DNA of 64,000 nucleotides, taken from the sequence record LR745206.1, one strand, 5' to 3'. Of the stretch, positions 22,989-58,562 are shown one piece after another. The notes beneath the pieces are model-generated. The model made no database searches, was not told the DNA's origin, and saw only the letters and a program-made list of their open reading frames with translations. Positions within the stretch are counted from its first letter, which is position 1. Each line of letters opens with the position of its first letter. The translations under genes were made by a program, and so were the position numbers.

Positions 22989-23058
22989 GGTTGGGTGACC
23001 GAGAGATAGGTGGAGACTCGCAAAGTCTTTTACGGTGGTTCAAATCCATCCCCAACCT
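22989..23058 (+). tRNA. tRNA-Cys(GCA), non-canonical
   Basis: acceptor GGTTGGG/CCCAACC, D stem ACC/GGT, anticodon stem GAGAC/GTCTT with loop TCGCAAA, T arm GGTGG-TTCAAAT-CCATC, U73 discriminator, no encoded CCA. Confidence 0.85.
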
Positions 23059-23071
23059 CTAATTTATATTT

Positions 23072-42123: not shown

Positions 42124-43082
42124 TAATTAAAAAGTATATAAAATTTATTAAAGAAAATTTAATGCAATTTAATTCATTAGGTGAATGGGTTGACTCATTA
42201 TCTGATGATGATTATGTTATGAATATTGTTAATAGATATTTGAAAGATATTGATCCGGATATTGAATTGGAAAATGCGGTAAATCTTTTGGATGATAATG
42301 AACAAGCTGATATTAGATCACAGATATCTGAATATTTAGAAAAAGGTATTCAGGAAAAAGATCCAAATGTATTAGCATCCACTGAAACTGATATATTAGA
42401 AAATGTTCAAGAAATAACTGTTGCTGGTAAAGGAGTATTTAACTCTTTTCTTAAATCACTAACTGCCCTTGGTCAAAAAGAATCTAAGCCAAATTATGAT
42501 AGATGTCCAGAAGATTTTTTAGTATTTTATCACTATCAAAATCTAAATTCTAATGATGTTAAGGTTGTTTTTAGTAGATTTAAATCACTTTTGAGATATT
42601 CTGATATGATTGATTATGGTAAGAATGAAGTTAGTCTTTATTTTGGTATTAAATGTGATGGTCAGTTTGAATATGGTATATCTTATGATAGTTTATCACC
42701 AATGGGTCAATTTAAATTATCACAATCATCTATTAAGTGGTTAGTTCAATTGGAATCTAAATCATCTAGATCACTTAAAAAGGAATTGGTTAACTTAACA
42801 TACAATGATATATTATTATTTGGTAAGATTAAAATGGATATGAAGGATTTTAATCCTGGTTATCATGAGAAGAGATCTTATCCTACTATAACTGATAGAG
42901 TTATCTCATTTGGGTATTATGGTGTTGGTAGATGGGATAATGGTAAATTGGATGAGGGTGAATATATGAATATTAAAAATAATTTTACTACTTGGATTCT
43001 TACTAAGAAATGGGGAAGTAAAGTTTTGATAAGTGTTAAGCCTCAATCATTTTGGTTATACATACATATAAAATTGAAATAA
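42120..43082 (+). CDS. hypothetical protein, putative head-packaged
   Basis: MIIKKYIKFIKEN start. Confidence 0.65.
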   Translation: MIIKKYIKFIKENLMQFNSLGEWVDSLSDDDYVMNIVNRYLKDIDPDIELENAVNLLDDNEQADIRSQISEYLEKGIQEKDPNVLASTETDILENVQEITVAGKGVFNSFLKSLTALGQKESKPNYDRCPEDFLVFYHYQNLNSNDVKVVFSRFKSLLRYSDMIDYGKNEVSLYFGIKCDGQFEYGISYDSLSPMGQFKLSQSSIKWLVQLESKSSRSLKKELVNLTYNDILLFGKIKMDMKDFNPGYHEKRSYPTITDRVISFGYYGVGRWDNGKLDEGEYMNIKNNFTTWILTKKWGSKVLISVKPQSFWLYIHIKLK

Positions 43083-43880: not shown

Positions 43881-44131
43881 AGAAACTTAAAATGCAAAAA
43901 GATTATTGGTTTCCTAGTCCAGATTATGTTAATAGATTTGGTCGTAAAAGAAGTATTGCTAAAATATTTGACCTTGAGTATGACGAATCTGATTTAGTAA
44001 ATTCCTCACAAATTCATTGGAGTAGTACCACTGCTCAACCAAGAATGAAATTTGTAATACCTATTGGTGATATGAAAGATAAACCAAGTATTGCTAAAAG
44101 AATCAAGGATTTGATAAAAAAATTCAAATAA
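43877..44131 (+). CDS. portal-like fragments flanking a tag
   Basis: QKDYWFPS, GRKRSIAKIF, RMKFVIPIGDM..KDLIKKFK. Confidence 0.6.
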   Translation: MKKLKMQKDYWFPSPDYVNRFGRKRSIAKIFDLEYDESDLVNSSQIHWSSTTAQPRMKFVIPIGDMKDKPSIAKRIKDLIKKFK

Positions 44132-44160
44132 GGTAGTCATGTGGGTATAATATATACCCT

Positions 44161-44490
44161 ATGATTAAGATTTATTTAATTTGTGCTGAAATAGGTGGTG
44201 AGAAGATGTATAAAATAGGTTATACAAAAAGAACAATTGAACAAAGAATAAAGGAATTTAAGACTGGTAATGCGTCCGAGTTCACTATAATAGATTCTTT
44301 TCAATCAGATTGGGGTACTAAAATAGAGGCACAATTACATAAGAGATTTAATCATAAAAAGGTTAATGGTGAGTGGTTTAAGTTAGATGAATCTGATATA
44401 AATAAGTTTCAAGATATGTGTAGTTTAATACATAATAATTTAGAAATTGTCTCTAAAACGACATATTATTTAGATAGAGGAGACTTTTAA
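44161..44490 (+). CDS. GIY-YIG-like T5orf172/MUG113 nuclease
   Basis: YKIGYTK..RIKE..IEAQLHKRF..GEWF. Confidence 0.8.
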   Translation: MIKIYLICAEIGGEKMYKIGYTKRTIEQRIKEFKTGNASEFTIIDSFQSDWGTKIEAQLHKRFNHKKVNGEWFKLDESDINKFQDMCSLIHNNLEIVSKTTYYLDRGDF

Positions 44491-44529
44491 ACTTATTTAG
44501 ATAAATAAATATAAAAAATAAAAGATATA

Positions 44530-44802
44530 ATGGGATCAATGAAAGAAATTAGTATTAGAGAATATATTTCTAATATAGACTTCAAACGAGATGATTGGAA
44601 ACTTTCAGTTATGAAAGAAGATATGAGAAAATTCTTAGGTGAAGAACCAGGTATCGATATCATTTACAAAAAAGATGTAATGATAAACGAAACAACACAA
44701 GAAGCTCAAGAATATGTTGATATCAATAAAGTTCAAATAGTTTTTTTTGATACTGATGAAAAATTTAAGAAACTAGAGTTTCTGATAGATGATAATGTTT
44801 AA
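44530..44802 (+). CDS. hypothetical protein
   Basis: 90-aa ORF in operon. Confidence 0.6.
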   Translation: MGSMKEISIREYISNIDFKRDDWKLSVMKEDMRKFLGEEPGIDIIYKKDVMINETTQEAQEYVDINKVQIVFFDTDEKFKKLEFLIDDNV

Positions 44803-45016
44803 AATGGACTTAAAAAATTACTACCTAGATCTTAAAAAAGTTTCTGAATTGGAATTAGAAGAAGATAGAAAAATTATACATGACTATTATAGGGATATGT
44901 TGAGTTATAATTATGAAAAAAGAGAAGAAATCGCAATTTCTATGTTTAATACACTATATAGTGGTGACTATTTAAAAGAAGTTCGTGATGAAAAAATTGA
45001 TCAAATACTTTCTTAA
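44789..45016 (+). CDS. tagged hypothetical protein
   Basis: ends VRDEKIDQILS; start may be a few codons later. Confidence 0.65.
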   Translation: MIMFKMDLKNYYLDLKKVSELELEEDRKIIHDYYRDMLSYNYEKREEIAISMFNTLYSGDYLKEVRDEKIDQILS

Positions 45017-45333
45017 TGGAAATAAAAGCTGATATATTAGATTACTTGGGTAAAATAGATGATGGTATTATTGTTTTACTTTCATTATCATATGATGGTG
45101 TGTATTATGAGGGAACACTATATTATAAGGATAAGTTAGTTGCTTTAACACCAGATGAAGTTCTTGAAGAGAAATTGGGATCTGTTATAGAAGATTGGGA
45201 AGGTTATAATGATTTAATGTTAGAAATACTTAAAAAAGTTGTTCCTTATGATGAGATGATTACTAGGGTTGATGATATTGATATGAATCAATATGGTATT
45301 GAACTAGGTAATAGTGACGAATCAATCGATTAA
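45016..45333 (+). CDS. acidic hypothetical protein
   Basis: 105-aa ORF, TAATG coupling. Confidence 0.6.
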   Translation: MEIKADILDYLGKIDDGIIVLLSLSYDGVYYEGTLYYKDKLVALTPDEVLEEKLGSVIEDWEGYNDLMLEILKKVVPYDEMITRVDDIDMNQYGIELGNSDESID

Positions 45334-45663
45334 TTCATTAAGTTTAATATTTCGATTAACCATTTTAAATTCATCAATCAAATCTCCCCAATATTTAAAC
45401 TTAATTCTATACTTACAACTCTTACCTAATTTAATATTAGACCAAGATTTTCCATCAGTTTTAAAATCCTTACTTATTGGAAATTGATATAAGTACATAA
45501 ACCAATAATTTCTATCTCTACTTTTTAAGAAATCTTTATTGTCTTTCAGATGATATGTATAATAAGCTTTTATAGCTTCATCATAATAATCACATATATA
45601 GTGTATTTCTGGCAATCCTTGTCCTCTTTGACAGGACATAATATAAATAAATTTCTCTTCCAT
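45322..45663 (-). CDS. tagged hypothetical protein
   Basis: ends VNRNIKLNELID. Confidence 0.65.
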   Translation of the reverse strand: MEEKFIYIMSCQRGQGLPEIHYICDYYDEAIKAYYTYHLKDNKDFLKSRDRNYWFMYLYQFPISKDFKTDGKSWSNIKLGKSCKYRIKFKYWGDLIDEFKMVNRNIKLNELID

Positions 45664-45697
45664 ATAGATTTTTATTAAAAAAGAGTATAAAGTTGTA

Positions 45698-46336
45698 TTA
45701 GATATTGATAAATCTCAATGTCATACCAAAAGCCTCTTCTTCATCAAAAGAAATAGACTCATTTTTTAGATTTAACTGGTCTTTTATCCTTGCACATAGT
45801 GGAGTTAATTCATCACTTAGAACACCTAATGATTCTACATTTAGTTGATTATCCGAACCTAATCTAACAAATATATAATTTGAATTTTCATAAACTTCAT
45901 AGAATTCAATATTATCTAAAGTTGAGACAGCTATTAACTCAACATCTTTAGATATCTGTGATATCTTTGGATACCCAATCATTTCACCATCTGTTTCAAA
46001 CTCATCTCTTATTTGGTTGTAAAAATCAATAGATTTAGATATAATTACTGATTTATCACCATAACTCTTTCTTCGTAATTTACTTTCCCAATTACTACCA
46101 ACCCAACTAGGATCATCATTAAATTCTTTTTTATACCAAGTGTATATTTCTTTTGATATTTTATCATATCTCCATTCAGTATATTTTAATATACCTCCCA
46201 TAATATCTTTAAAAATATCTGATGATATCAAATCATTTATTTCTTTTTCTCCCATGAAATCACCAACTTTATCTTTTATTTCGGATAATTGTTCATCAGT
46301 ATAAGATTCTAGAAATTTAACCCACTTTTTAATCAT
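45698..46336 (-). CDS. hypothetical protein, putative head-packaged
   Basis: likely start MIKKWVKFLES at 46336, directly after late motif 46341-46350. Confidence 0.7.
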   Translation of the reverse strand: MIKKWVKFLESYTDEQLSEIKDKVGDFMGEKEINDLISSDIFKDIMGGILKYTEWRYDKISKEIYTWYKKEFNDDPSWVGSNWESKLRRKSYGDKSVIISKSIDFYNQIRDEFETDGEMIGYPKISQISKDVELIAVSTLDNIEFYEVYENSNYIFVRLGSDNQLNVESLGVLSDELTPLCARIKDQLNLKNESISFDEEEAFGMTLRFINI

Positions 46337-46394
46337 ATAATATATATTAAACTTACATTGTAAAAATGATATAAATAAAAAATAATAATATTGA

Positions 46395-48092
46395 ATGCTT
46401 ATAAGTGAAATAGGAATTAGAGGATATAAATCATTTGGAAATAACGAACAAATATTAAAACTAAATACCGAAAGAGGTGAACTATTACTTCTTGTTGGTA
46501 ACAATGGTAATGGTAAATCTTCATTACTAGAATCTTTTGAATACGTATTATACGGTAAAGTTAAATCAGGTAAAACAAAAAAATGGCATAAATTATCCAC
46601 GTTACCTAATAGGATAAATGGTGAGATGTTAAATCGAATAAAATTTGTTGCTAGTGGAACTGATGTTGAGATTAAAAGAGGTATATCACCTGGTATATTG
46701 GAGTTAACTGAAAATGGTCTTGTTAATGAAAGAGCTGGTAAATCCAACTTAGATGATCATATTGAAAAATATATTGGATTGGATATCGAAACATTCAAAT
46801 CTTTTATATCAATGTCTATAAATGATTTCAAAAACTTTATATCATTAACAAATGAGGAGAAAAAATTATTACTTGATAAGCTATTTAACCTAGAAGTCAT
46901 TAATATTCTAAACGGTATATTAAAAGACATCAATAAAAATAATAAAATTAGATTAGCCTCTTTGGATTCTGAGATAAGAACACTCGAAGAATCAATTGAT
47001 TCTATAAAAAGATCTATTGCTAATGCTATCGAAAGAGAAAAGGAAAATCTTCAACAAGAAATAGATGTTCTTGTAGAAGATATGAATTCTAAAAAAGAAG
47101 ATTATGCAGCATTAAAAGACAAGGTTGAGAAGATAAAGGAAAAAGAGAAAATATTATCCGATGAAATGGATAATGAAAAGAAACAATATATCAATACACA
47201 GAATGATATCAGAAATGTACAAAAGGAGATAGATCTTTATGATTCTGGTAAATGTCCAACTTGTTCAACTGATTTTAAATCAACACATTTTGCTGATTTA
47301 AGAACATCATTAATTGAAAAGAAACAAGGATATGAAAATATTAAAATTGAAATTGAAGAAAATATTAAATCTGTTAAATCTAAACAAGTTAAATTAAAGG
47401 AAATTGGTGATGGTACCACTTCCTCTTTTACGGATTTGAGTTATCTATTGAGAAACTATAAAACTAAGATAGATGAGTTATCAAGAAAGAAGAGTAAAGA
47501 AAATGGTAAAGAATCAGTTAATGTTCAAGAGTTTCAAAAAACAATTGAAGAATTAGAGGGTAAGAAATCATTTAGTCATGATAATATTTCTATCAGTAAA
47601 GAGAAAGAACTTTATTATAAAGAGTTAAATAGAATTTTTGGTGAAGATGGTGTTAAGAAAGCAATCATTGCTGGTATTATAAAACCAATAAACCACTTCA
47701 TAAGAGAAAATATTAAAACGATGGGTTTACCTTTTGGTGTTCAATTAGATGAGACTTTCACTGCTGAGATTAAAATGTTGGGAACACCTATTGAACACGA
47801 TTCATTATCAACTGGTGAGACAAAGAAGATTAATATAGCTATATTAATAGCTTACTTGAAATTAATTAGAACTAAAAAACACATCAATATACTCTTCTTA
47901 GATGAGGTCTTTGCCTCAATTGATATCGAGGGTATAGATTCTATATTGGGTCTCTTAAAATCATTTGCAAATGACTACAATATCAATATATTTGTTGTTC
48001 ACCACGCAATTCTTAGTCAGGAGATGTTTGATAGAATTATAAAAATAAACAAAGATGTTTTTTCATCAATAGAGGAAGTAGAATATGAATGA
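46395..48092 (+). CDS. SbcC/Rad50/T4 gp46-like recombination ATPase
   Basis: GNNGNGKS Walker A, coiled coil with CPTC hook, LSTGE signature, LFLDE Walker B. Confidence 0.9.
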   Translation: MLISEIGIRGYKSFGNNEQILKLNTERGELLLLVGNNGNGKSSLLESFEYVLYGKVKSGKTKKWHKLSTLPNRINGEMLNRIKFVASGTDVEIKRGISPGILELTENGLVNERAGKSNLDDHIEKYIGLDIETFKSFISMSINDFKNFISLTNEEKKLLLDKLFNLEVINILNGILKDINKNNKIRLASLDSEIRTLEESIDSIKRSIANAIEREKENLQQEIDVLVEDMNSKKEDYAALKDKVEKIKEKEKILSDEMDNEKKQYINTQNDIRNVQKEIDLYDSGKCPTCSTDFKSTHFADLRTSLIEKKQGYENIKIEIEENIKSVKSKQVKLKEIGDGTTSSFTDLSYLLRNYKTKIDELSRKKSKENGKESVNVQEFQKTIEELEGKKSFSHDNISISKEKELYYKELNRIFGEDGVKKAIIAGIIKPINHFIRENIKTMGLPFGVQLDETFTAEIKMLGTPIEHDSLSTGETKKINIAILIAYLKLIRTKKHINILFLDEVFASIDIEGIDSILGLLKSFANDYNINIFVVHHAILSQEMFDRIIKINKDVFSSIEEVEYE

Positions 48093-48384
48093 GATAGACA
48101 ATTTATTATGTGATTTGTTTGAGATTAGGAATAGTAAACATTCTGTTATCAAAAAACAAAAGTATGAGAAAGCTGCTGAATTGAGAGATTCTGAGAGACA
48201 ATTAGAAGTTAAAATCTATAAGATTCTCTATTCGGAAGAATTATATGATTGGGAAAAATTATCAGAAGGTATAAGTAAGTATTGCTTTGACACATATGGT
48301 TTTATATATGATAATAAAGATTATGATTCTAATTTTAGAGAAACAATTCGAGAAATAAAATTAAAACAACTGGGTATAAAATAA
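48085..48384 (+). CDS. UVR-domain (ClpC middle domain-like) protein plus tag
   Basis: KHSVIKKQKYEKAAELRDSERQL; ends IREIKLKQLGIK. Confidence 0.7.
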   Translation: MNEIDNLLCDLFEIRNSKHSVIKKQKYEKAAELRDSERQLEVKIYKILYSEELYDWEKLSEGISKYCFDTYGFIYDNKDYDSNFRETIREIKLKQLGIK

Positions 48385-48394
48385 TACATATATT

Positions 48395-48664
48395 ATGGCA
48401 AATCAGAAATTATCAACAAAACAACTTTCATCTACTGGTATTCCATCAGGTAGTGTTTTAATATCGGATGGGACTGGTAATGTTACTTGGAATGATACCA
48501 TATCAATGAATTCTGATATGATAGACTTTTTTGAGTTGGTATTAGTAGCACTTGGATATGATATAACTTATGATGAGTTTAGTAAGATGAGTGGTGAAGA
48601 GAAAAAAGCAATCATTCGTGATATAAAAATTAAAAGGGTATTAGATGTTAATAATAAAGATTAA
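48395..48664 (+). CDS. tail-fibre-repeat-like fragment plus tag
   Basis: GSVLISDGTGNVTW; ends IRDIKIKRVL. Confidence 0.6.
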   Translation: MANQKLSTKQLSSTGIPSGSVLISDGTGNVTWNDTISMNSDMIDFFELVLVALGYDITYDEFSKMSGEEKKAIIRDIKIKRVLDVNNKD

Positions 48665-48839
48665 AGAAGGAGAGAAAATAGATAGAGCTCTAAAGAGATA
48701 CAAGGCTAAATACAATAAAACTAAAATTGGTAAAGAATTGAGAGATAGAAAAAATTTCAAGAAGAAAAGTGTTAAACGTAGAGAGGAATTAAGTAAAGCT
48801 ATCTATATTCAAAATATTAAAGATTCAGAACAAGATTAA
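48645..48839 (+). CDS. rpsU: 30S ribosomal protein bS21
   Basis: MLIIKIKEGEKIDRALKRYK..ELRDRKNFKKKSVKRR..KAIY. Confidence 0.88.
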   Translation: MLIIKIKEGEKIDRALKRYKAKYNKTKIGKELRDRKNFKKKSVKRREELSKAIYIQNIKDSEQD

Positions 48840-48840
48840 T

Positions 48841-49275
48841 ATGGGTTTCAATAAGAGATATATTAAAAAGGAAATGATATTGGATAATGTTAATAACATT
48901 TCTTATATAAAAGGATTAGTTAAGGCTGATGCTTTGATAATGGATAATTGGTCTGTGAAATTCTTTGATAACTTCAATTTTAAATATGAAACATATAATA
49001 AAATAAGAGAAGGTATAAAAGAAGATACAATATTTGATTCACATCATAATAATGTCCTTAATCATGAAAATTATAAAGAATTATTTAATTTATCAAATGT
49101 CCTTTTGAACCTTAAAACAGATCCAGCTTGGATTGATATTTTATTAACAAGTGATATTTTAAAAGAACTCGATATGGATTTTGTAGAAAAACAAAACCCA
49201 CCAGAAGATATAAGAGGTAGATTTAACGAATTGGTACCTTATTTTATTAAAGTAATAGAAGATTATTATGGATAA
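48841..49275 (+). CDS. hypothetical protein
   Basis: 144-aa ORF starting MGFNKRYI. Confidence 0.6.
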   Translation: MGFNKRYIKKEMILDNVNNISYIKGLVKADALIMDNWSVKFFDNFNFKYETYNKIREGIKEDTIFDSHHNNVLNHENYKELFNLSNVLLNLKTDPAWIDILLTSDILKELDMDFVEKQNPPEDIRGRFNELVPYFIKVIEDYYG

Positions 49276-49987
49276 GAATAAAAATTATTATGATATACTT
49301 GGTGTTATACATAAATCAGAACCAAATCAAATAAAAAAAGCTTATTATAAATTATCATTTATACACCATCCTGATAAAGGAGGAGATCCTGTTGTATTTG
49401 GTGAAATGACCGAAGCTTATGATGTTCTTTGTGATGAAAAATCAAGAGAAGAATATGACTCAAAAAGTAAATATGGTAAAAACTATGATGAATATTTTGA
49501 GTTGTTTGATATAAAGGTTGATTTCACATATGAAGATAGTAAAGATCATTTAGAAAAATTCAAAAAAAATGAAATAAATAATATTCAATTAGAAATTGAC
49601 GAAACATTTAATGGTAAAATCGAGTATGAAAGATGGGTAAAGTGTAAATCTTGTGATGGTAGTGGAAAAGATATGTCTGGAAAGATAGTTATCAGGGATA
49701 ATGATGGAAATGTTGTTAAGACATTTGATGCTGAGGATGGTTGTGATTTCTGTGAAGGAAGTGGTAAGAGTTATGATGGTTCTGATTGTTCATTTTGTGT
49801 TGGTCAGGGAAAAGTTGGACTAAAACCATGTGATAATTGTATTGGTAATGGTAGAATTATGGGTAAACAAAAATTATCTGGTATTAAATTAGTTGGTGAT
49901 GAAACTAAACTAGACACAATGGGTCATTTTTCTAAGAATGGTGTTGGATATTTACTTTTATTAAAAAAATCTGAAAAAAATTCATAA
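49268..49987 (+). CDS. dnaJ: DnaJ-family co-chaperone, C-terminally short
   Basis: NYYDILGV..HHPDKGG J-domain; four CxxCxGxG repeats. Confidence 0.85.
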   Translation: MDKNKNYYDILGVIHKSEPNQIKKAYYKLSFIHHPDKGGDPVVFGEMTEAYDVLCDEKSREEYDSKSKYGKNYDEYFELFDIKVDFTYEDSKDHLEKFKKNEINNIQLEIDETFNGKIEYERWVKCKSCDGSGKDMSGKIVIRDNDGNVVKTFDAEDGCDFCEGSGKSYDGSDCSFCVGQGKVGLKPCDNCIGNGRIMGKQKLSGIKLVGDETKLDTMGHFSKNGVGYLLLLKKSEKNS

Positions 49988-49991
49988 TAAT

Positions 49992-50022
49992 TTTGGATAT
50001 CAAATATATTTTTGTATATTTG
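49992..50022 (+). promoter_or_regulatory. Bacteroidota-type -33/-7 promoter
   Basis: TTTG(49992)-N19-TATATTTG(50015-50022). Confidence 0.7.
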
Positions 50023-50053
50023 TATTATTAATCACTAAAAACAAAAATATATT

Positions 50054-50653
50054 ATGAAAACATTAAAAAACTTACTAGTCGCTATTGTGACTCTTTTCAC
50101 GTTGAGTTCTTACTCACAAACAACATATACTTATTATGTTGATAATACTCCATTTGGTTTTACTGGAACACAAAATGTCCAAGTCGGTGACGTTGTTGAG
50201 TTCGTAAATAGTTATGCTAGTGGAACACAATTTATTGCAAAAAGAGATGGTGTTGGTCTTGTTGGATATAACCCAACAAATACTACTAATATGGGAGCTG
50301 TTATTTACTCCTACACGATATTATCATCTGATGTTAATTTTGATATTCAAGTTGGTGTCGCTTCAGCATTTACTGCCTACTTTCAAAGAATTTATTTCAC
50401 TGTTTCTGCAACTACTGGTGTTGATGAAGTATCTAATACGAATTTCACTGTATATCCTAACCCAACAACTGATTTCTTAAATCTAAAGGGTGATAATATC
50501 GAATCTGTGAAGGTATTTGATATGAGTGGTAAACTTGTGTTATCAGATACATATAACACATCAAATGTTAAATTAGATGTAACATCATTAGTCAATGGTT
50601 ACTACACAGTATTAGTAAATGATGTTAAACCAATCAAGTTTATTAAGAACTAA
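50054..50653 (+). CDS. secreted protein with T9SS type A C-terminal sorting domain
   Basis: signal peptide MKTLKNLLVAIVTLFTLSSYS then Q; C-terminal VYPNPTT..VKVFDMSGKLV..LDVTSLVNGYY..KFIKN. Confidence 0.88.
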   Translation: MKTLKNLLVAIVTLFTLSSYSQTTYTYYVDNTPFGFTGTQNVQVGDVVEFVNSYASGTQFIAKRDGVGLVGYNPTNTTNMGAVIYSYTILSSDVNFDIQVGVASAFTAYFQRIYFTVSATTGVDEVSNTNFTVYPNPTTDFLNLKGDNIESVKVFDMSGKLVLSDTYNTSNVKLDVTSLVNGYYTVLVNDVKPIKFIKN

Positions 50654-50669
50654 AAATAAAGATTAATAG

Positions 50670-50696
50670 AAAACCCACTTTAGAGTGGGTTTTTTT
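50670..50696. terminator. bidirectional intrinsic terminator
   Basis: AAAACCCACT-TTAG-AGTGGGTTTTTTT. Confidence 0.8.
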
Positions 50697-50699
50697 ATG

Positions 50700-53663
50700 C
50701 TATAGAATGAAAAGTCCCTCTCCACTATTACCACCACCGCCACTTGGAGGTTCGGTTGATTGTTCGGTAGATAGACTATCCAATCCTATTGTTATATTGT
50801 CTATAAATGAAAAATCACTATCTGTATAATCTATGAATGGTGCTATTCCTTGGTAAGGTATTTGTATAGATTTATTTACATACTCTTCTGTTGTGTACTG
50901 GAAGAATGGTATCATATCTAATTCATATAATTTTATATTATCAAATGATGCTGTTAATCCACCAAGATTTAATAATAAAATATCTAATCCTCTTCTGTTA
51001 TAAAAATATTCATATTTTTTTATATTATTGGTTAAGGCATGATATACATAATCAGATATTGGAAATGCTGGATCTGCTAATCCTGGTATGTTTGTATTAT
51101 TCAGTAGGTATATGCTCGGTAGTGAGTTAATTGGAAATGTATCATTTATAGTGGAATACTCGGTTAAATCAAACTCAACAACTGAATATCTTTTTTTAGA
51201 AATATTAATATTTGTATTATCTAATGTTAATATTGAAAATGGATCAGTTAATTTTATTTGAATAGATTCATCACTTTTCCTATTTATTTCACTATTGGTA
51301 CCACCAAATAATCCTATACTGAATGTCCATCCGTTATCATAGAAATTATCCATGGTTCCGTTAGCTGGTATGGTGCTAAATGGTTCATTAAATTCAGATA
51401 CTTCACCAAGAAAATCTTCATATATTTTATGTTTTGTTCCCAATGAATATATAGACTTACCAAGAGAGTGGCTATTTCTAAATGATGATATACTAGATAA
51501 TACATCATTTGTTATATATCCATATAGATTGTTTTCGGAAAATTCTCCATATTGTGGACTATAAGAAACTAAACTTCTTCCTAAATTTGATGCTGATTGT
51601 GTTAAGTATTTAACATCAATCCATGAATTATATTTATATATAAGTGATAGATTAGTAGATTCTACTGATGTTACATTAGTACCAACATTATTATCATAAA
51701 ATTCGAAATTTTGAATAACTCCTGTTCCTGTTCTTCTTGATATTTGTCCACCTTCTGCTGTTGTTGATGATCCAAATTGTTTATCAAGTAGTATTAAATA
51801 ATCATTAATAACATCAACTACCGTAGCATCTCCATCATATTGTGGATTTAAAAGCTTATTTGTCTTATCAACATAAACTAAATCACCAACTTTAAATCCA
51901 TGTTGTGTTGAGAATGTAAGACCTAATGTATATTGATTTCCTGAAATATAATATGTATCATAGAATGTATATTCTGGGTATTCACCATAGAAGTGACCAC
52001 CATCATATTTACCATCAATCCAATGACTATCATACATTTCTGTTATATAAGGGAATCCTTTAAATAGACCAGCATTCCATATACCCTCAAAATATCCATT
52101 AAGGAATCCACCGTTTAGCCAAACATTTTTGGTCATTTTTATTTTATGATTATCTGAATCTTTTTCTATTCTCCTAAGTGGGAATGTATTTACAAAATCA
52201 ACAATTATGCTATTTGTGGTAACTGATAATACAGTAAAATAGTTTTTCATTAATTTCCTATTCTCATTTATATCAATACCTACAATATTACCAATTGATA
52301 CTTTATCACCTATATTAAAATTAGATGTTGATGATTGTGGACCAGTTATTTTAATCCTCCATCTTGTATTTTTAGTTTCCATTAATAATGATATTTCGAT
52401 ATCATCAAACTCATATACCTCTGTATCAACTCTCCAACCACTATTCCATACTCCATTTTCCCAAACACCAGCTTTGAATGTTCCATTACCAACTTTTGCT
52501 CTAAGAAAATTTAAGTTTACAACATCACCATACAGATTAGAAAAGAATCCTGGGAAACCAGTAGCTCCTAAAAAGGTTGAAGATGTTGGATTATGTAGTG
52601 TATCATCACCTATTACAACAACACTATAAGTTGCATCTGGTGATCCACCAATAACACCTAATGGTGTCGGTTCGTAATAATTACCAGAGTTTGTAAATAA
52701 AAATTGTTCATTATTATCAATTTCTTGATATGATCCTTCTATTATTATATTTGATATTGTTAGTGTTGCGTTTGATTCAAAATAATTAGCTACAAATAGA
52801 ACATATTGATCACCTATTAGATTATAAAAATTATAACTACCACTTTCTTCTATCTTACCTAGAAATTGTCCATTTTGTAATACCGAATTGAATGTTGCTG
52901 TATTTGTTGTTTTCAATGAAGATAGATAGATATCATCTATTAAATACATATTAACATATGATTGTGTTGTTGATCCACTTACTGCTATATCAAAAGATAT
53001 ATTGAATATTGGATATTCAATAAGCTTTGTTATATAGTTACTAGCGGTATATCCTAATTGTGTTATACCACTATTATTTGTACCAGCTGGATATCTCCTC
53101 GTTGATGATATTGTTGTGTTTGATTTCCACTTAAAAGATTCTGATGCTGTAGCATACTCCCACCCTAGATTTAAGGAGCTTGATGTTATAGACCAACCTT
53201 GTATAAACCAATCAAACTCAACAACTTCAAATCCATTTATTGTAGGTATTCCAAATGTATCAGATGCTGGATTACCGAATCCATTATAAGTTGATTTATA
53301 TTCCACCATATCACTTGATACTTTAGGGGCTGCTGGTTTTGAATACATATATACTTTTTCTGCAATAGGTAGTGATGGTCTGCTATCATATAATGGATTT
53401 GCATTCTGTATATATGAGAATGTTGCATCCCAAGGAGTTTCTATTTCTAAAAATTTTGAAAAAGTCGGTGATCCATCGAAATTAGAAAAATCATCAACTG
53501 TTGTTATAAATTGATAGTTCTTGTTTGGGCTAAAGGTTTTGGTTGTTGAAACATACCATAAACTATATGTGGTCGAAGCTCCAGAGCTTGATCTGGTCAT
53601 ACCACCTTCCGATGCGTTATATACCCATTTACTACCACCTGTTGTACTTGTCTGCCAACCCAT
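50700..53663 (-). CDS. 987-aa virion/tail protein with W/G repeats
   Basis: GTFKAGVWENGVWNSGW, GYFEGIWNAGLF; beta-rich. Confidence 0.65.
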   Translation of the reverse strand: MGWQTSTTGGSKWVYNASEGGMTRSSSGASTTYSLWYVSTTKTFSPNKNYQFITTVDDFSNFDGSPTFSKFLEIETPWDATFSYIQNANPLYDSRPSLPIAEKVYMYSKPAAPKVSSDMVEYKSTYNGFGNPASDTFGIPTINGFEVVEFDWFIQGWSITSSSLNLGWEYATASESFKWKSNTTISSTRRYPAGTNNSGITQLGYTASNYITKLIEYPIFNISFDIAVSGSTTQSYVNMYLIDDIYLSSLKTTNTATFNSVLQNGQFLGKIEESGSYNFYNLIGDQYVLFVANYFESNATLTISNIIIEGSYQEIDNNEQFLFTNSGNYYEPTPLGVIGGSPDATYSVVVIGDDTLHNPTSSTFLGATGFPGFFSNLYGDVVNLNFLRAKVGNGTFKAGVWENGVWNSGWRVDTEVYEFDDIEISLLMETKNTRWRIKITGPQSSTSNFNIGDKVSIGNIVGIDINENRKLMKNYFTVLSVTTNSIIVDFVNTFPLRRIEKDSDNHKIKMTKNVWLNGGFLNGYFEGIWNAGLFKGFPYITEMYDSHWIDGKYDGGHFYGEYPEYTFYDTYYISGNQYTLGLTFSTQHGFKVGDLVYVDKTNKLLNPQYDGDATVVDVINDYLILLDKQFGSSTTAEGGQISRRTGTGVIQNFEFYDNNVGTNVTSVESTNLSLIYKYNSWIDVKYLTQSASNLGRSLVSYSPQYGEFSENNLYGYITNDVLSSISSFRNSHSLGKSIYSLGTKHKIYEDFLGEVSEFNEPFSTIPANGTMDNFYDNGWTFSIGLFGGTNSEINRKSDESIQIKLTDPFSILTLDNTNINISKKRYSVVEFDLTEYSTINDTFPINSLPSIYLLNNTNIPGLADPAFPISDYVYHALTNNIKKYEYFYNRRGLDILLLNLGGLTASFDNIKLYELDMIPFFQYTTEEYVNKSIQIPYQGIAPFIDYTDSDFSFIDNITIGLDSLSTEQSTEPPSGGGGNSGEGLFIL

Positions 53664-53696
53664 TATTTATATATTATTTAATATTATATTCATATC

Positions 53697-56600
53697 TTAA
53701 AATGATGGTAGTGCTGGTGCTGATGGTAATATTCTACTTGTTGGTGTAGATCCAGTTGCGAAAATTATTCTATCACTATCAACAGTATTCTCATATTTGA
53801 AAATATTCCATATATGACAAGATGAAGTTCCAGACCAAGACATACCCCTAAACAACATTTGTTTATTAAAGTCATTTAACACACTACCATCAAATTGGTA
53901 ATAGGAACCTTGCCAGTTACCATTTCTCCAAGTACCATTCTCCCAGAATACATTATAAGCATTCATATAGTTTGATATACCATTTTTCCATACCATACCA
54001 AATGCTGTTCCTGTTAACCATTTACCTTGATTCCATCGTGATATATAAAAATCACTATCACTTAGTATACCATTATACCAAACACAAGAACCACTCCCTG
54101 TTGATAAATTATCATTTACATTAAATGATGCTGATAGTCCACCATTTCTTATTACGTATGGATTAAATGAACTTGAATTAAATTTACCCGTTTCGAATCC
54201 ACCATTTAACCAAACACTATTATTAAATTCACCTGATGGATGGCTAAATGTTCCAGCTATCCAAAGTGCATTTTTAACAGTAGTTATCTTTTCCTTTATT
54301 CTTGTTACAGATCTTTCAATATCTGTGTATAATTTTTTATCCTTTATGAATTTATCTTTAACATTTGTTACATATCCATCATTCCACATACCATAATATG
54401 ATTGTGTATATGATTGTACAAAATTATAAGCATTTGACACGGTCATAGCATCAACTTTATATCCACCTACCGCTGAATAGGTTGAGCTTCCCTCAAATTG
54501 CCCAGATGTAAATACTCCACTATTCCAATATCTTCCTGTGAATTTACCTCCATTGAATTCTCCGGTATACCAAACAGAGTTTGTTCCTAAATTAGCATTA
54601 CCAAACTCACCTCCATTAAATACACCATCTTCCCAACCATAATCTGTTTGTGTCGTGGATCCGGATACTGTCCATCCGTATCCTGATATAAATTTACCAC
54701 CGTTAAATGTTCCATTTTTCCATCTAGCGTTTGTTATAAATTGACCACCATTGAACATACCAGTATACCAAATAGCAGTATTCGATGCGGTTGTTTGTAT
54801 TATATCTGATCCAAATACACCTCCATTAAATACACCATCATTCCAATATATTGTTGAATTGGATAATCCAGAATAACTTGTATCTAATGCGTATAGTGTT
54901 GCATTCTCTACCGTGGCATAATTAATAACACCATTATAGAATAAAGTATCAGATACAGATACTACAATATCACCAATTGTTCCATTATTAAATATACCAT
55001 CATACCATTTAGAATAGTATATCTTTCCGTTGTTAAACACCCCATCTTCCCAATCACTTTTATAAAACTCACCATTATTGAACTCACCATTTTGCCAAGT
55101 GTATCTATCATTGTATGTAGTAAGTGTTGTTAACCCATCTTTATAATAAGATCTAATGTTTTCGGTGTAATAGTTAGGTGTATTTACTGTTGAATTAGCA
55201 TCAAAGCTTCTTGAATCATAGAATGTTCCAGTTCTAAATACACCATCAATCCATCTACTTTTTTTAATTGTTCCTTTATTAAAGGTACCACCATTCCATA
55301 TTAAAAATTGACCTAATCCATCATTCCAAATGTCACTACCATTAACTATACTACCATTCATATATAATGCTTTTGATAAAATATTGTTATTGTTAGTGAA
55401 TAATGGATCTGATATAACTAAGCTTCTAATTTTCTCTATGTTATTAAAATCTTTATCTTCAACATCAAATGAATCATTCTCTATAAATGATTCTGTCATA
55501 TATGATCTTCTGAATAAACCAGCTTTTATCTTAGATTTATTAAATTTTGTTTTATAGATATATCCATATCTATTATAAGCATCTGTTGTATAAAATAACC
55601 CATCATCTAATAATGTTGATAAAATACTATAAGTTCCAGTTACTACTTCTTCCAATTCTATAACACCGCTTATGTTAGATAATACTTTATATGTATCTGG
55701 TAATCTTATAACCGAACCAGTTGTTGAGATAACTTGTACCTTAGCATTTATATTACCATCATTTATTGTTATTAAATCACCGACAGTATATCCAATTCCT
55801 GATGTGCTTATTGTTGCACTTAAAACCTCACCGTTTGTTATTGATGTTACCGTGACTGATGCTGATGGTGATCCACCTGGTATATCCAATACATCACCTA
55901 TTAGATATCCAGTACCCTGGTTTGATATAGTTGCTGATATAACTACACTACCAGAAACGGTATAATCTAATGTGAATCCTATTCCAGCACCACCAACTGT
56001 ACTAACACCAAAGTAATTATTATCAGCGTACCCACTACCAGGTACTAATGAGCCAATTGATAATACAGATCCGATTGTGTCAGCCGTATAATCTAATGTG
56101 AATCCTGTACCAGATCCGTTTATTGTTGATACTCCTGTTGCTGATTGTGTATATCCAGAACCAGAAGCTGATATTGTTATCGATAATATTTTACCAGAAG
56201 TGTCATAATCAACACCATTTAAGAAAACTACATCACCCTCTTTCAAATAATCTTCTGATGATTCTGGGTATTCAAAATTATAGTTGGTAATTGCTGTTAA
56301 AACAGAACTCATAGTAGCTATTGATAAATCATAATAACCACCCTCAATTGATGGTATTGTGATATTTGAATCATTATTATAATTTATATGTCTACCACTA
56401 TTCCAATTTGATGTTTCAAATAATCCACTATCAAAATCAGAGTCTATTATATAAGCTTTTGTAAAATCAATATTATTACCTAGTGATGGTGGCATTATTA
56501 CTGATGCTGTTGGACTAGGATGTGATCTATTGAAATCTATACCATATACTTCCGTTGATGGGCTATGTATATCAGAAATCGATGTAACTATATCAATAGA

Positions 56601-58472: not shown

Positions 58473-58544
58473 TAATAGTTTTATTAACTTTTCAGTATAT
58501 ATAAATATGTTAATAGTTTCTATATGTTATTAAACATTTTTTCA

Positions 58545-58552
58545 TATATTTG
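58545..58552 (+). promoter_or_regulatory. Bacteroidota-type -7 element
   Basis: TATATTTG just upstream of ATG 58563. Confidence 0.55.
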
Positions 58553-58562
58553 TATAATTAAT

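What the first reader, a model, noticed from the sequence alone, without database searches (positions are those of the whole stretch)
50054..50653. Phage-encoded cargo for the host type IX secretion system
Sec signal peptide, Gln at +1 (typical of Bacteroidota), a passenger of about 100 aa of unknown fold, and a canonical type A CTD (YPNP..KFIK), in its own unit with a full host-type promoter and terminator. Inference: expressed early and exported to the cell surface, possibly masking a receptor (superinfection exclusion), jamming T9SS, or altering gliding or biofilm. It also pins the host to T9SS-bearing Bacteroidota.
Basis: partly seen in the sequence, partly recalled or inferred. Interest (0 to 1): 0.65.

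Follow-up and report, generated by a model that had tools for sequence, protein, structure and literature searches.

The report
Megaphage-encoded type IX secretion cargo protein
A 635-kb "megaphage" carries a small, well-conserved gene for a copper-less, plastocyanin-shaped protein with all the address labels needed for export through its Bacteroidota host's type IX secretion system, and it is one of six such cargo genes in this phage, so the virus probably re-dresses the surface of the cell it infects.

Summary
Window 50054-50653 (+) encodes a 199-aa protein with four parts: a Sec signal peptide ending SYS|Q, a ~100-aa passenger, a disordered linker, and a type A T9SS C-terminal domain (CTD). 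The CTD passes curated cut-offs (PF18962 47.7 vs 27 bits; TIGR04183 39.2 vs 23). Its model superposes on solved T9SS CTDs (Z 9.5-10.5).

The window is LR745206.1, a 634,780-bp uncultured megaphage. The passenger is not of unknown fold. It is a confidently modelled cupredoxin-like beta-sandwich (pLDDT 91.8) that lacks the copper ligands.

The gene is under purifying selection (dN/dS 0.135; CTD 0.034). It keeps its position between DnaJ and two giant ORFs across a phage lineage, including the sister megaphage LR756502. Its Bacteroidota-type promoter and its terminator are conserved too.

Homologues also sit in Flavobacteriales/Bacteroidota chromosomes, and on a tree they are interleaved with the phage copies.

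The same phage encodes five more predicted T9SS substrates: one type A and four type B.

Phage-encoded T9SS cargo has one precedent (Bellas et al. 2020), so this is a new member of a known kind. Early expression, surface localisation and the proposed roles (receptor masking, T9SS jamming) remain untested.

The parts
49992..49995 (+). -33 element (TTTG, followed by G) of a Bacteroidota sigma-A-type promoter
   Evidence: Pattern TTTG-N19-TAnnTTTG matches at 49992-50022. TTTGG is conserved at the same spacing in orthologous phage loci L004, L097 and L099.
50015..50022 (+). -7 element TATATTTG (consensus TAnnTTTG), ending 31 nt before the start codon
   Evidence: It is identical (TATATTTG) in L004, L097 and L098, and TATCTTTG in L099. 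The A-rich leader without a Shine-Dalgarno sequence is typical of Bacteroidota (own knowledge).
50054..50653 (+). CDS, 199 aa plus stop: T9SS type A cargo protein
   Evidence: dN/dS is 0.135 against the 84%-identical phage orthologue in L004. There are 32 full-length relatives.
50054..50116 (+). Sec/SPI signal peptide (residues 1-21), predicted cleavage SYS|Q
   Evidence: Sequence features, and Q22 invariant in 32/32 members. The model shows a helix at 3-15 and pLDDT below 50 at residues 10-19. Q-rule literature: PMC5837995.
50117..50413 (+). Passenger (residues 22-120): seven-stranded cupredoxin-like beta-sandwich, acidic, with no Cys or His
   Evidence: Passenger-only model: pLDDT 91.8, pTM 0.83. 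Foldseek top hits are plastocyanin, pseudoazurin and amicyanin (TM up to 0.59, E about 3e-4). No Cu ligands. No Pfam or PHROG match.
50414..50446 (+). Flexible linker (residues 121-131), the probable site of CTD removal
   Evidence: pLDDT below 50 at residues 121-128. It has the highest column entropy, 1.73 bits. Cleavage here is an inference from known T9SS biology.
50447..50650 (+). Type A T9SS C-terminal sorting domain (residues 132-199) with the YPNP, GYY and KFIK motifs
   Evidence: PF18962 47.7 bits and TIGR04183 39.2 bits. Structural Z 9.3-10.5 to solved T9SS CTDs. dN/dS 0.034.
50669..50696 (.). Intrinsic terminator between the convergent CTD gene and the 987-aa ORF: hairpin plus U7 on the + strand, likely bidirectional
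   Evidence: -15.1 kcal/mol, z -4.4, and 0 of 200 shuffles fold as well. Functionally equivalent hairpins sit at all six phage orthologous loci.
50700..53663 (-). Context: 987-aa ORF, the invariant convergent neighbour of the CTD gene in the phage lineage
   Evidence: Synteny in L004, L097, L098, L099, L103 and two contigs without DNA. 39.8% identical in LR756502. No Pfam, PHROG or PDB match.
49268..49987 (+). Context: DnaJ-like protein (J domain plus CxxCxGxG zinc finger), the conserved upstream neighbour
   Evidence: PF00226 63.2 bits. Conserved upstream in L004, L005, the P0009 contig and L103.

Best explanation
This is a genuine phage-encoded substrate of the host's type IX secretion system.

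Proposed pathway:
1. Host RNA polymerase transcribes the gene as a monocistronic unit from a Bacteroidota -33/-7 promoter.
2. The preprotein crosses the inner membrane through Sec.
3. Signal peptidase I cuts after S21. The exposed Gln22 is probably cyclised to pyroglutamate, as in most Bacteroidota exported proteins.
4. The C-terminal type A CTD is recognised by the host T9SS (SprA translocon with the PorV shuttle), which the phage does not encode.
5. The protein is moved across the outer membrane, and the CTD is removed at the flexible linker.

What reaches the cell surface or the medium is a ~100-residue acidic, copper-less cupredoxin-like beta-sandwich. It has a conserved core and variable loops, so it looks like a non-catalytic binding module rather than an enzyme or redox protein.

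The gene is a conserved component of a megaphage lineage, one of six T9SS-tagged proteins in this genome. The most likely role is to alter the surface of the infected Flavobacteriales-like cell.

My favoured specific role is binding or masking a T9SS-dependent surface structure used as a phage receptor (superinfection exclusion, or preventing progeny from re-adsorbing to the doomed cell). Altered adhesion is the second option.

Shown: domain architecture, folds, selection, synteny, conserved regulatory elements, phage origin.
Inferred: actual export, CTD cleavage, surface location, timing, binding target.
For: - CTD above the curated cut-offs, with structure matching solved, translocon-bound T9SS CTDs.
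- The signal peptide with Gln at +1 is invariant in the family. The Q-rule is specific to Bacteroidetes (PMC5837995).
- Purifying selection is strongest on the CTD: 0.034, against 0.19 for the passenger.
- Conserved synteny across phage contigs down to about 50% identity, and in the sister megaphage LR756502.
- Promoter and terminator conserved while synonymous sites are nearly saturated.
- Confident cupredoxin-like passenger model. There is no Cys in 31 of 32 members, and no His or Cys in this one.
- Five further T9SS-tagged, Q-rule signal-peptide proteins in the same phage genome.
- The phage lacks SprA, while a bacterial carrier of the family has it.
- Flavobacterium phage resistance commonly maps to gliding/T9SS genes, so T9SS-dependent surface structures are plausible receptors (10.1101/2020.10.02.323337 and PMC9804748).
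- Precedent for phage T9SS cargo: PMC7468147.
Against: - There is no expression or proteomic evidence. No RNA run holds the locus.
- The host is uncultured and unidentified, so T9SS dependence is inferred.
- The passenger's structural matches are marginal (Foldseek E about 3e-4; best VIA Z 7.0, below the tool's own Z 8 caution line). The fold class is therefore probable, not certain, and it does not reveal a ligand.
- The promoter motif is not enriched in the AT-rich window.
- Nothing directly links the protein to a receptor.
- That the neighbouring giant ORFs are virion or fibre proteins rests only on weak similarity to cyanophage sheath/head inserts.
Confidence: 0.6

Rival explanations
1. 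Passive passenger gene. A host T9SS-cargo gene was picked up by the phage and is carried without any role in infection.
For: Full-length homologues exist in Flavobacteriales/Bacteroidota chromosomes. Phage and bacterial copies are interleaved on the tree, needing 5 label changes, which is no better than shuffled labels.
Against: The gene keeps the same position across phage genomes that share only about 31% of their genes (PMC9723777). It is under purifying selection (dN/dS 0.135 at dS 0.69). It keeps its own conserved promoter and terminator. Bacterial copies sit on longer terminal branches and in AT-rich patches. One of these is a ~3-kb island with an IS1595 transposase, which looks more like acquisition by the bacteria.
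Confidence: 0.1
2. T9SS decoy or jammer. The protein's job is to occupy the translocon or the PorV shuttle with its CTD and so shut down host secretion and gliding.
For: The CTD is the most constrained part (dN/dS 0.034, entropy 0.92 bits). The same genome encodes two minimal proteins that are little more than a signal peptide and a CTD: L003 with type A and L107 with type B.
Against: The passenger is a well-folded domain under purifying selection (0.19), with a conserved core, which a decoy would not need. The phage also encodes three large adhesin-like type B cargo proteins (PKD, SprB repeat) that need a functioning T9SS. The CTD closely resembles ordinary, efficiently secreted CTDs.
Confidence: 0.07
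3. Secreted protease inhibitor of the chagasin/ICP type. The beta-sandwich would block host or competitor cysteine proteases through its loops.
For: VIA-align lists the ICP inhibitors EhICP2 (3m86, Z 6.4) and PbICP-C (3pnr, Z 6.1) among the top ten passenger matches. An NPT tripeptide lies in a long loop (residues 73-75).
Against: Z values of 6-7 are in the tool's stated noise range for beta-sandwiches. The NPT positions are poorly conserved (entropy 2.1-2.4 bits at N73 and P74). Foldseek ranks cupredoxins first, not ICPs. There are no sequence-level hits to ICP families.
Confidence: 0.04
4. Functional blue-copper electron carrier (an auxiliary metabolic gene), as suggested by JGI's 'plastocyanin' label on one homologue.
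For: JGI's name for P0028. Weak Cupredoxin_1 hits in 2 of 32 members. Cupredoxin fold matches. The profile hits a true multi-cupredoxin, P0051, at E 3.6e-6.
Against: The type-1 site needs His-Cys-His-Met. This protein has no His and no Cys, and 31 of 32 members have no Cys in the passenger. The similarity to P0051 is limited to a 25-column strand-turn-strand motif, with hhalign probability 22%. No Pfam cupredoxin model reaches threshold.
Confidence: 0.02
5. Virion decoration or structural protein. The Ig-like CTD and the sandwich passenger would serve as capsid or tail decoration domains, unrelated to secretion.
For: It is adjacent to two giant ORFs that may be structural. BFVD matches below the top hit include BppU, baseplate and Hoc-like Ig domains.
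Against: A conserved cleavable Sec signal peptide with the Q-rule would send the protein out of the cytoplasm, where virions assemble. The C-terminal domain matches T9SS CTDs specifically in sequence, above curated thresholds, and not generic Ig domains. Bacterial chromosomal homologues have the same architecture.
Confidence: 0.03

Closest known systems
Phage-encoded T9SS cargo of 'Cryophage' (Bellas et al. 2020, Nat Commun, PMC7468147)
   Same: Both are genes in an uncultured Bacteroidota-infecting phage that carry a T9SS type A sorting domain. In both cases they are interpreted as hijacking the host T9SS, possibly for inter-strain competition or superinfection exclusion.
   Different: The Cryophage cargoes are enzymes or toxin-like modules (endoglucanase, GH39, PA14) located in hypervariable metagenomic islands. 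This one is a small non-catalytic cupredoxin-like domain. It is positionally conserved and under purifying selection in a >600-kb megaphage lineage, and it is accompanied by type B CTD cargo.
Canonical bacterial T9SS type A cargo (e.g. F. johnsoniae FspA and NucA, T. forsythia mirolase, P. gingivalis RgpB)
   Same: Same architecture: Sec signal peptide, passenger, linker, then a 7-stranded Ig-like CTD with the PNP and C-terminal K-x-x-K motifs. The CTD model superposes at Z 9.5-10.5, rmsd 1.5-2.1 A. It passes TIGR04183 and PF18962.
   Different: It is encoded by a virus. The passenger belongs to a very small, previously undescribed family: 15 representatives at E <= 1e-3 among 1.84 billion.
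Cupredoxins (plastocyanin, pseudoazurin, amicyanin; PF00127, PF13473) and copper-less cupredoxin-fold ligands such as ephrins
   Same: Greek-key beta-sandwich of about 100 residues. It shares the V-x-V-G-D-x-[IV]-x-F-x-N strand-turn-strand motif with true cupredoxins. Ephrin ectodomains, which use this fold for binding rather than redox chemistry, also appear among the matches.
   Different: There is no His/Cys/His/Met copper site. No Pfam cupredoxin model reaches threshold. Structural scores are marginal (TM <= 0.59, Z <= 7).
Phage superinfection-exclusion proteins exported to the envelope (e.g. T5 lipoprotein Llp masking FhuA; own knowledge, not tested here)
   Same: It is a small exported phage protein with its own promoter, encoded next to and on the strand opposite to large putative virion or fibre genes.
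   Different: There is no sequence or fold relationship. The export route is T9SS rather than the lipoprotein pathway. Neither receptor masking nor the fibre nature of the neighbours is demonstrated.
Q-rule signal-peptide proteins of Porphyromonas gingivalis phages (PMC10367356)
   Same: Both are phage genes of unknown function whose signal peptides expose an N-terminal Gln, taken as adaptation to Bacteroidota export.
   Different: That study does not mention T9SS or CTDs at all (0 occurrences of T9SS, type IX or CTD). Here the outer-membrane step is specified by a CTD.

Membership tests
T9SS type A cargo (TIGR04183 / PF18962 CTD-bearing proteins) | C-terminal sorting domain scoring above the curated family cut-offs | tested here: met
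   PF18962 47.7 bits vs 27. TIGR04183 39.2 bits vs 23. All 32 family members match PF18962.
T9SS type A cargo (TIGR04183 / PF18962 CTD-bearing proteins) | The domain lies at the extreme C-terminus | tested here: met
   The TIGR04183 match covers residues 133-198 of 199.
T9SS type A cargo (TIGR04183 / PF18962 CTD-bearing proteins) | Compact Ig-like beta-sandwich CTD fold like solved CTDs | tested here: met
   Residues 129-199: Z 10.5 (8qb1_A), 10.3 (8glk_D), 9.7 (8gl6_D), 9.5 (8glj_D), 9.4 (PorU), 9.3 (PorZ), with rmsd 1.5-2.6 A. Fold description in PMC11285876.
T9SS type A cargo (TIGR04183 / PF18962 CTD-bearing proteins) | N-terminal Sec signal peptide for delivery to the periplasm | tested here: met
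   The n/h/c regions, small residues at -3/-1 and invariant Q at +1 are read from the sequence and alignment. The model shows an N-terminal helix. No dedicated signal-peptide predictor was available.
T9SS type A cargo (TIGR04183 / PF18962 CTD-bearing proteins) | Secretion depends on a T9SS (SprA/PorV/GldKLMN) in the producing cell | not testable with these tools
   The host is unknown. Indirect evidence: the phage has no SprA, while the Flavobacteriales MAG carrying a homologue has one (531.8 bits).
T9SS type A cargo (TIGR04183 / PF18962 CTD-bearing proteins) | CTD removed by the PorU sortase, with the passenger released or anchored | not testable with these tools
   Only a disordered linker (residues 121-128, pLDDT below 50) consistent with a cleavage region.
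Blue copper proteins / cupredoxins (PF00127, PF13473) | Greek-key cupredoxin beta-sandwich fold | tested here: inconclusive
   Foldseek top 50 is dominated by cupredoxins (TM up to 0.59, rmsd 3.6-3.9 A, E 3e-4 to 2e-3). The BFVD top hit is a 'Blue type 1 copper protein'. VIA Z is <= 7.0, with Ig-like domains tied.
Blue copper proteins / cupredoxins (PF00127, PF13473) | Type-1 copper ligands (His, Cys, His, Met) | tested here: not met
   The window passenger has 0 His and 0 Cys. 31 of 32 members have 0 Cys.
Blue copper proteins / cupredoxins (PF00127, PF13473) | Family HMM above the gathering threshold | tested here: not met
   No hit for the window protein at E <= 1. Cupredoxin_1 matches only 2 of 32 members, best E 0.033. 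hhalign against a true cupredoxin gives probability 22%.
Phage-encoded T9SS cargo (sensu Bellas et al. 2020) | Encoded in a bona fide phage genome | tested here: met
   100% identity to LR745206.1 over the tested stretch. That genome is treated as a megaphage with TerL phylogeny in PMC9723777. The window holds phage-typical content.
Phage-encoded T9SS cargo (sensu Bellas et al. 2020) | Hypervariable between phage variants (metagenomic island) | tested here: not met
   The position is conserved and the gene is under purifying selection. The passenger is merely more variable than the CTD (entropy 1.68 vs 0.92 bits).
Bacteroidota sigma-A promoter (-33 TTTG / -7 TAnnTTTG) | Both elements at 19-21 nt spacing upstream of the gene, conserved in orthologues | tested here: met
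   49992-50022. Conserved in L004, L097 and L099, and the -7 box in L098. Transcription start and activity were not tested.
Envelope-exported superinfection-exclusion proteins (Llp-like, functional class) | Blocks adsorption or entry of the same or related phages by binding the receptor | not testable with these tools
   There is only circumstantial context: an exported small protein next to giant putative virion genes.

The most novel reading that the evidence does not exclude
The megaphage deploys a coordinated T9SS 'secretome' that re-surfaces the infected cell. It comprises two small type A cargoes, three large PKD/SprB-repeat type B adhesin-like cargoes, and CTD-only mini-proteins. Within it, this copper-less cupredoxin-like protein would be a receptor- or adhesin-masking superinfection-exclusion factor delivered by T9SS. 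Its repeated appearance in Flavobacteriales chromosomes, on AT-rich and transposase-linked patches, would then reflect bacteria domesticating the phage gene as a cheap anti-phage surface shield.
Probability: 0.15. Interest if true: 0.75.

Novelty: new member of a known kind. Interest (0 to 1): 0.5.

Why it matters
T9SS builds the surface coat, the gliding adhesins and the secreted enzymes of Bacteroidota. Flavobacterial phage resistance often maps to T9SS and gliding genes.

A phage that feeds its own proteins into this system can change how an infected cell sticks, moves and is recognised by other phages. Here the cargo gene is conserved across a lineage of the largest known phages, has intact conserved regulatory signals, and is accompanied by five more T9SS-tagged genes. 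That turns a single earlier anecdote (Cryophage) into a pattern that can be tested.

It also gives an independent, mechanistic host assignment for an uncultured 635-kb phage, namely T9SS-bearing Bacteroidota and probably Flavobacteriales. It defines a tiny new passenger family that could be expressed in Flavobacterium johnsoniae with existing T9SS mutants.

Tried and rejected
- **PHROGs:** no family for the protein.
- **ESM Atlas:** two calls returned busy errors and the third gave no usable hit.
- **Generic sigma-70/terminator scan:** promoter-like sites were below the shuffle expectation and no terminator was called. The hairpin was confirmed by direct folding instead.
- **Window-wide promoter motif:** the Bacteroidota motif is not enriched (6 vs 3.1 expected), so the promoter claim rests on conservation.
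- **First tree:** it contained a mistranslated L008 row, my off-by-one error. It is discarded and replaced.
- **Wrong regions:** L104 and L105 were fetched on the wrong side of two minus-strand genes. They were refetched as L109 and L110.
- **PorP/SprF (PF11751):** not found in either megaphage, but the control rang nowhere, so this is not evidence of absence.
- **Neighbouring ORFs:** ORFs next to the gene in bacterial island L006 and in the unclassified contig L100 have no relatives in LR745206 or LR756502. The direction of phage-bacterium transfer is therefore unresolved.
- **Blue-copper function:** rejected for lack of ligands.
- **hhalign of the passenger profile vs a true cupredoxin:** only 25 columns, probability 22%.
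- **Sequencing runs:** two DNA runs holding 6% of the words and no RNA.
- **PDB sequence searches of the two giant neighbours:** nothing.
Full report
**1. What is there**

The ORF lies at window 50054..50653 (+) and encodes 199 aa. The stretch tested (window 44000-56000) is 100% identical to positions 292000-304000 of LR745206.1, an 'uncultured phage' record of 634,780 bp. The window is therefore record 248001-312000.

The literature treats this genome as one of the largest megaphages. PMC9723777 gives its origin as a sub-surface sample in Japan. Its sister is LR756502, from a French lake, with which it shares about 31% of its genes.

The protein has four parts:
- **Signal peptide, residues 1-21.** It has a basic n-region, a hydrophobic core and S-Y-S before the predicted cut.
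- **Passenger, residues 22-120.**
- **Linker, residues about 121-131.** It is disordered.
- **CTD, residues about 132-199.** It carries the YPNP, GYY and KFIK motifs.

Pfam Por_Secre_tail scores 47.7 bits against a cut-off of 27. NCBIfam TIGR04183, the type A T9SS sorting domain, scores 39.2 bits against 23. PHROGs has no family for the protein.

**2. Structure**

An AlphaFold2 model built from a 32-sequence family alignment has mean pLDDT 83. It shows two beta domains joined by a linker with pLDDT below 50.

The C-terminal domain superposes on experimentally solved T9SS CTDs:
- mirolase CTD 8qb1_A: Z 10.5, rmsd 1.5 A over 69 residues
- NucA, RemA and FspA CTDs captured in the Flavobacterium johnsoniae translocon (8glk_D, 8gl6_D, 8glj_D): Z 10.3, 9.7 and 9.5
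- PorU and PorZ: Z 9.4 and 9.3

A profile search of PDB sequences also finds only CTDs.

The passenger was modelled alone from an 11-sequence alignment of locus references. The model is confident, with pLDDT 91.8, pTM 0.83 and seven strands.

- **Foldseek against the PDB** returns almost exclusively cupredoxins: plastocyanin 1baw and 3cvb (TM 0.58-0.59, rmsd 3.6-3.9 A), pseudoazurin, amicyanin and multicopper-oxidase domains. It also returns ephrins. E-values are only about 3e-4 to 2e-3.
- **The best BFVD match** is a giant-virus 'Blue type 1 copper protein'.
- **The Foldseek-independent aligner** gives at most Z 7.0, with Ig-like domains, chagasin-type inhibitors, ephrins and plastocyanins all tied. 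That is within the tool's stated noise range.

At sequence level, a passenger-only profile searched against 1.84 billion representatives finds 15 proteins at E <= 1e-3 and 7 at E <= 1e-10. Most have the same ~200-aa architecture. One hit, P0051 (E 3.6e-6), is a real multi-domain blue-copper protein. The similarity is confined to a 25-column strand-turn-strand motif, V-x-V-G-D-x-[IV]-x-F-V-N, with hhalign probability 22%.

The type-1 copper ligands are absent. The window passenger has no His and no Cys, and 31 of 32 family members have no Cys.

My reading is that the passenger is a degenerate, copper-less cupredoxin-like sandwich. It is acidic (8 Asp/Glu against 3 Lys/Arg), its core strands are conserved and its loops are variable. 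That is the profile of a binding module, not of an enzyme or a redox protein. JGI's label 'plastocyanin' on one homologue is explained by this resemblance and should not be taken functionally.

**3. The gene is functional and long-resident in the phage lineage**

The word-based protein search found about 33 full-length relatives of 186-218 aa, all with PF18962.

*Phage contexts.* Context could be read for 12 relatives. Seven are phage:
- the window itself
- P0002/L004, 84% identical, on a 44-kb syntenic fragment
- P0005/L097, P0009, P0012/L098, P0014 and P0017/L099

In each the gene is followed by a convergent ORF that reads about 770-1100 aa. Some of these are cut off by the contig end. Where the contig reaches further, the order is DnaJ upstream, then the gene, then ~1000-aa and ~1590-aa ORFs and SIR2.

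The sister megaphage LR756502 has a much more divergent full-length homologue. The profile scores 60.1 bits (E 1e-16) and the ORF is 186 aa. It sits in the same DnaJ-gene-giant arrangement. Its signal peptide ends in A|TP, without Gln.

*Selection.* Nei-Gojobori estimates between the window and L004 (dS 0.69) are as follows:

| Region | dN/dS |
|---|---|
| Whole gene | 0.135 |
| CTD | 0.034 |
| Signal peptide | 0.145 |
| Passenger | 0.19 |

*Regulatory elements.* These are conserved although synonymous sites are close to saturation.
- TTTGG-N19/20-TAT(A/C)TTTG precedes the gene in the window, L004, L097 and L099. L098 keeps the -7 box, but the contig ends before the -33 position.
- A strong hairpin plus T-run follows the stop codon in all six phage loci (-15 to -23 kcal/mol), built from different stem sequences.
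- In the window the hairpin is at 50669-50696: -15.1 kcal/mol, z -4.4.

The motif alone is not enriched in this AT-rich window: 6 found against 3.1 +/- 1.7 expected.

**4. Relation to bacteria**

Five homologues are in clearly cellular contexts:
- **P0026/L006:** TonB-dependent receptor, SbcCD, 2-oxoacid dehydrogenase
- **P0028/L096 and P0025/L007:** both next to a thiolase / fatty-acid oxidation cluster
- **P0033/L009:** AcrB/OEP/HlyD efflux
- **L008:** on a 785-kb contig of a Flavobacteriales MAG, next to a type I methylase

All named carriers are Bacteroidota, and where resolved they are Flavobacteriales. The L008 genome encodes the T9SS translocon SprA (531.8 bits). The phage does not.

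On a maximum-likelihood tree, phage and bacterial copies are completely interleaved. The labels need 5 changes, no fewer than shuffled labels do (mean 4.1). Each bacterial copy pairs with a different phage sub-lineage:
- P0028 with P0009 and P0011: support 100/100
- L008 with P0016, next to P0013 and P0014: 90/86
- P0025 with P0024, next to P0017: 91/99

Bacterial rows sit on longer terminal branches (0.34-1.9 against 0.05-0.24). They lie in patches more AT-rich than their flanks. The clearest case is L006, with a ~3-kb island at 21-28% GC against about 42%, which also holds an IS1595 transposase.

This shows repeated exchange and hints at phage-to-bacterium capture. The direction is not settled, however. 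The tree is unrooted, most rows have no context, and the island's other ORFs have no relatives in the two megaphages.

**5. The gene is part of a larger T9SS programme in this phage**

Searching the whole record shows five more predicted T9SS substrates, all outside the window.

| Locus | Size | CTD type | Other features |
|---|---|---|---|
| L003 | 117 aa | A | TIGR04183 24.5 bits (over 23); PF18962 25.6 bits (under 27); signal peptide ends SFSQ, followed by Q |
| L109 | 1205 aa | B (CHU_C / TIGR04131) | Reelin-B, PKD |
| L110 | 832 aa | B | Glycine-rich domain, Ig_7, PKD |
| L106 | 732 aa | B | SprB repeat, PKD-like |
| L107 | 107 aa | B | Little more than a signal peptide and CHU_C (34.6 bits vs 27) |

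The three large proteins score 45-57 bits on CHU_C, against a cut-off of 27. In all five, the signal peptide ends just before a Gln. Counting the finding, that makes six Q-rule, CTD-tagged proteins in this genome.

The Q-rule is described as specific to Bacteroidetes (PMC5837995, PMC10653852).

No PorP/SprF partner was found in the phage, but that search had no positive control.

**6. Mechanism**

The shown facts fit the standard T9SS type A route:
1. Sec export
2. Signal peptidase I cleavage, exposing Gln22
3. CTD-dependent passage through the host's SprA translocon
4. CTD removal at the linker
5. Release or surface anchoring of the ~100-residue sandwich

Every step after translation is an inference from the known pathway. 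None could be tested here, and no RNA or proteome data exist for the locus.

For the biological role I favour surface remodelling by a binding module, specifically masking of a T9SS-dependent surface structure. Three points support this:
- Flavobacterium phage resistance repeatedly maps to gliding and T9SS genes (10.1101/2020.10.02.323337 and PMC9804748).
- The gene is always paired with two giant ORFs. These are conserved in the sister phage at 40-45% identity. One carries a segment 28-36% identical to cyanophage proteins annotated as tail sheath or head protein. That is weak support for their being virion proteins.
- From my own knowledge, receptor-masking genes such as T5 llp lie beside receptor-binding-protein genes.

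This remains a hypothesis. 'Jamming' is less likely for this gene, because its passenger is folded and constrained and because the phage's own type B cargoes need a working T9SS. The two CTD-only mini-proteins are better candidates for such a role.

**7. Comparison with the known, and novelty**

As a protein it passes every testable membership criterion for T9SS type A cargo. As a cupredoxin it fails the defining copper-site criterion and the HMM threshold, so it is 'cupredoxin-like' only.

Phage-encoded T9SS cargo has been described once. Bellas et al. 2020 called Cryophage 'a unique occurrence' (PMC7468147). Those cargoes are enzymes in hypervariable islands.

Full-text searches found no paper linking T9SS with huge, mega or jumbo phages. 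The P. gingivalis phage study notes Q-rule proteins but does not mention T9SS.

A biased pattern scan of IMG/VR nevertheless found nine viral contigs with type A CTD matches. Most of these ORFs begin with a signal peptide and run 133-835 aa. I did not check that those contigs are truly viral. The phenomenon is probably under-reported rather than unique.

I therefore rate this a new member of a known kind. Three aspects are new:
- a previously undescribed, very small passenger family
- conservation and synteny in the largest phages
- phage-host gene exchange, and a six-member T9SS-tagged gene set

**8. Verdict**

The cargo status and the host inference are well supported. 'Unknown fold' is replaced by a copper-less cupredoxin-like fold. 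Timing, localisation and function remain untested.

Interest is 0.5. This is a solid, testable case that broadens a single earlier report, but it is not a new kind of system.

Noticed in passing
LR745206.1 outside the window: L109:112-3729 (-), L110:116-2614 (-), L106:269-2467 (+): Three large phage proteins (1205, 832 and 732 aa) have Q-rule signal peptides and type B T9SS CTDs (CHU_C 45-57 bits; TIGR04131 45.9-55.9 vs cut-off 35). Their modules are adhesin-like: PKD, SprB repeat, Ig_7, Reelin subrepeat-B and an ALK/LTK glycine-rich domain. No PorP/SprF partner was found in the phage.
   Followed up: partly
LR745206.1 outside the window: L107:295-618 (+) and L003:1327-1680 (+): Two mini-proteins (107 and 117 aa) consist of a Q-rule signal peptide and little more than a CTD. 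One is type B (CHU_C 34.6 bits). The other is type A-like (TIGR04183 24.5 bits over cut-off 23, PF18962 25.6 bits under cut-off 27). They are candidates for T9SS decoys or adaptors.
   Followed up: partly
window 48645-48839 (+): A phage-encoded ribosomal protein bS21 (PF01165, 46.8 bits) lies three genes upstream. It is conserved at the same place in the related phage contigs L004 and L005.
   Followed up: no
window 49268-49987 (+): A phage DnaJ-like co-chaperone (J domain 63.2 bits plus a CxxCxGxG zinc-finger region) lies immediately upstream of the cargo gene. It is conserved there in all longer phage contigs and in LR756502. A chaperone next to an exported protein may or may not be coincidence.
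   Followed up: no
window 50700-53663 (-) and 53697-58472 (-): Two giant ORFs (987 and 1591 aa) are rich in N-G-x-F/W-x-G-G repeats and have no Pfam, PHROG or PDB sequence match, apart from a sub-threshold pentapeptide-repeat hit. They are conserved in LR756502 at 39.8% and 44.9%. Residues 704-946 of the larger one resemble inserts in cyanophage proteins annotated as tail sheath or head protein (28-36% identity).
   Followed up: partly
window 58524-59297 (+); 46395-48092 (+); 48085-48384 (+): SIR2-family protein (152.6 bits; phrog_2162). SbcC/Rad50-like ATPase (phrog_77, 243 bits). A small protein whose L004 homologue carries a weak UVR-domain hit. The ATG ORF at 46395 overlaps the 45698-46747 minus-strand ORF, so one of the two start calls is probably wrong.
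   Followed up: no
window 31524-37274 (+), 38230-40923 (+), 40966-43082 (+): Further large ORFs (1916, 897, 385 and 320 aa) have no Pfam or PHROG match at all. The 897, 385 and 320-aa ORFs are syntenic in L004.
   Followed up: no
window 22989-23059 (+): A single tRNA-Cys (GCA) gene is the only tRNA in the 64-kb window.
   Followed up: no
window 8778, 17245, 23614, 36621, 47964, 49992 (+): All six matches to the Bacteroidota promoter pattern TTTG-N18-21-TAnnTTTG are on the + strand. Four share the exact -7 box TATATTTG, and several lie just upstream of ORF starts (17265, 23642, 48085, 50054). The total number is not above chance, but the strand bias and placement may be meaningful.
   Followed up: partly
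L006:9400-12400: In a bacterial contig the homologue sits in a ~3-kb AT-rich island (21-28% GC vs about 42%) with small orphan ORFs and an IS1595-family transposase. L007 and L096, from different samples, both place the homologue beside a thiolase gene, which suggests one older insertion inherited in a bacterial lineage.
   Followed up: partly
L087-L095 (IMG/VR contigs): Nine IMG/VR viral contigs have type A CTD matches. Most of the ORFs begin with a signal peptide and run 133-835 aa, and several are near-identical ~830-aa proteins from different samples. This suggests phage-borne T9SS cargo is more common than the single published case. I did not check whether these contigs are truly viral.
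   Followed up: no
alignment A1, columns for window residues 25 and 114: Two positions, on the first and last passenger strands, are His in many family members (26/32 and 15/32) but Tyr in the window protein. A His pair in some members could form a non-type-1 metal or pH-sensitive site that this copy lacks.
   Followed up: no
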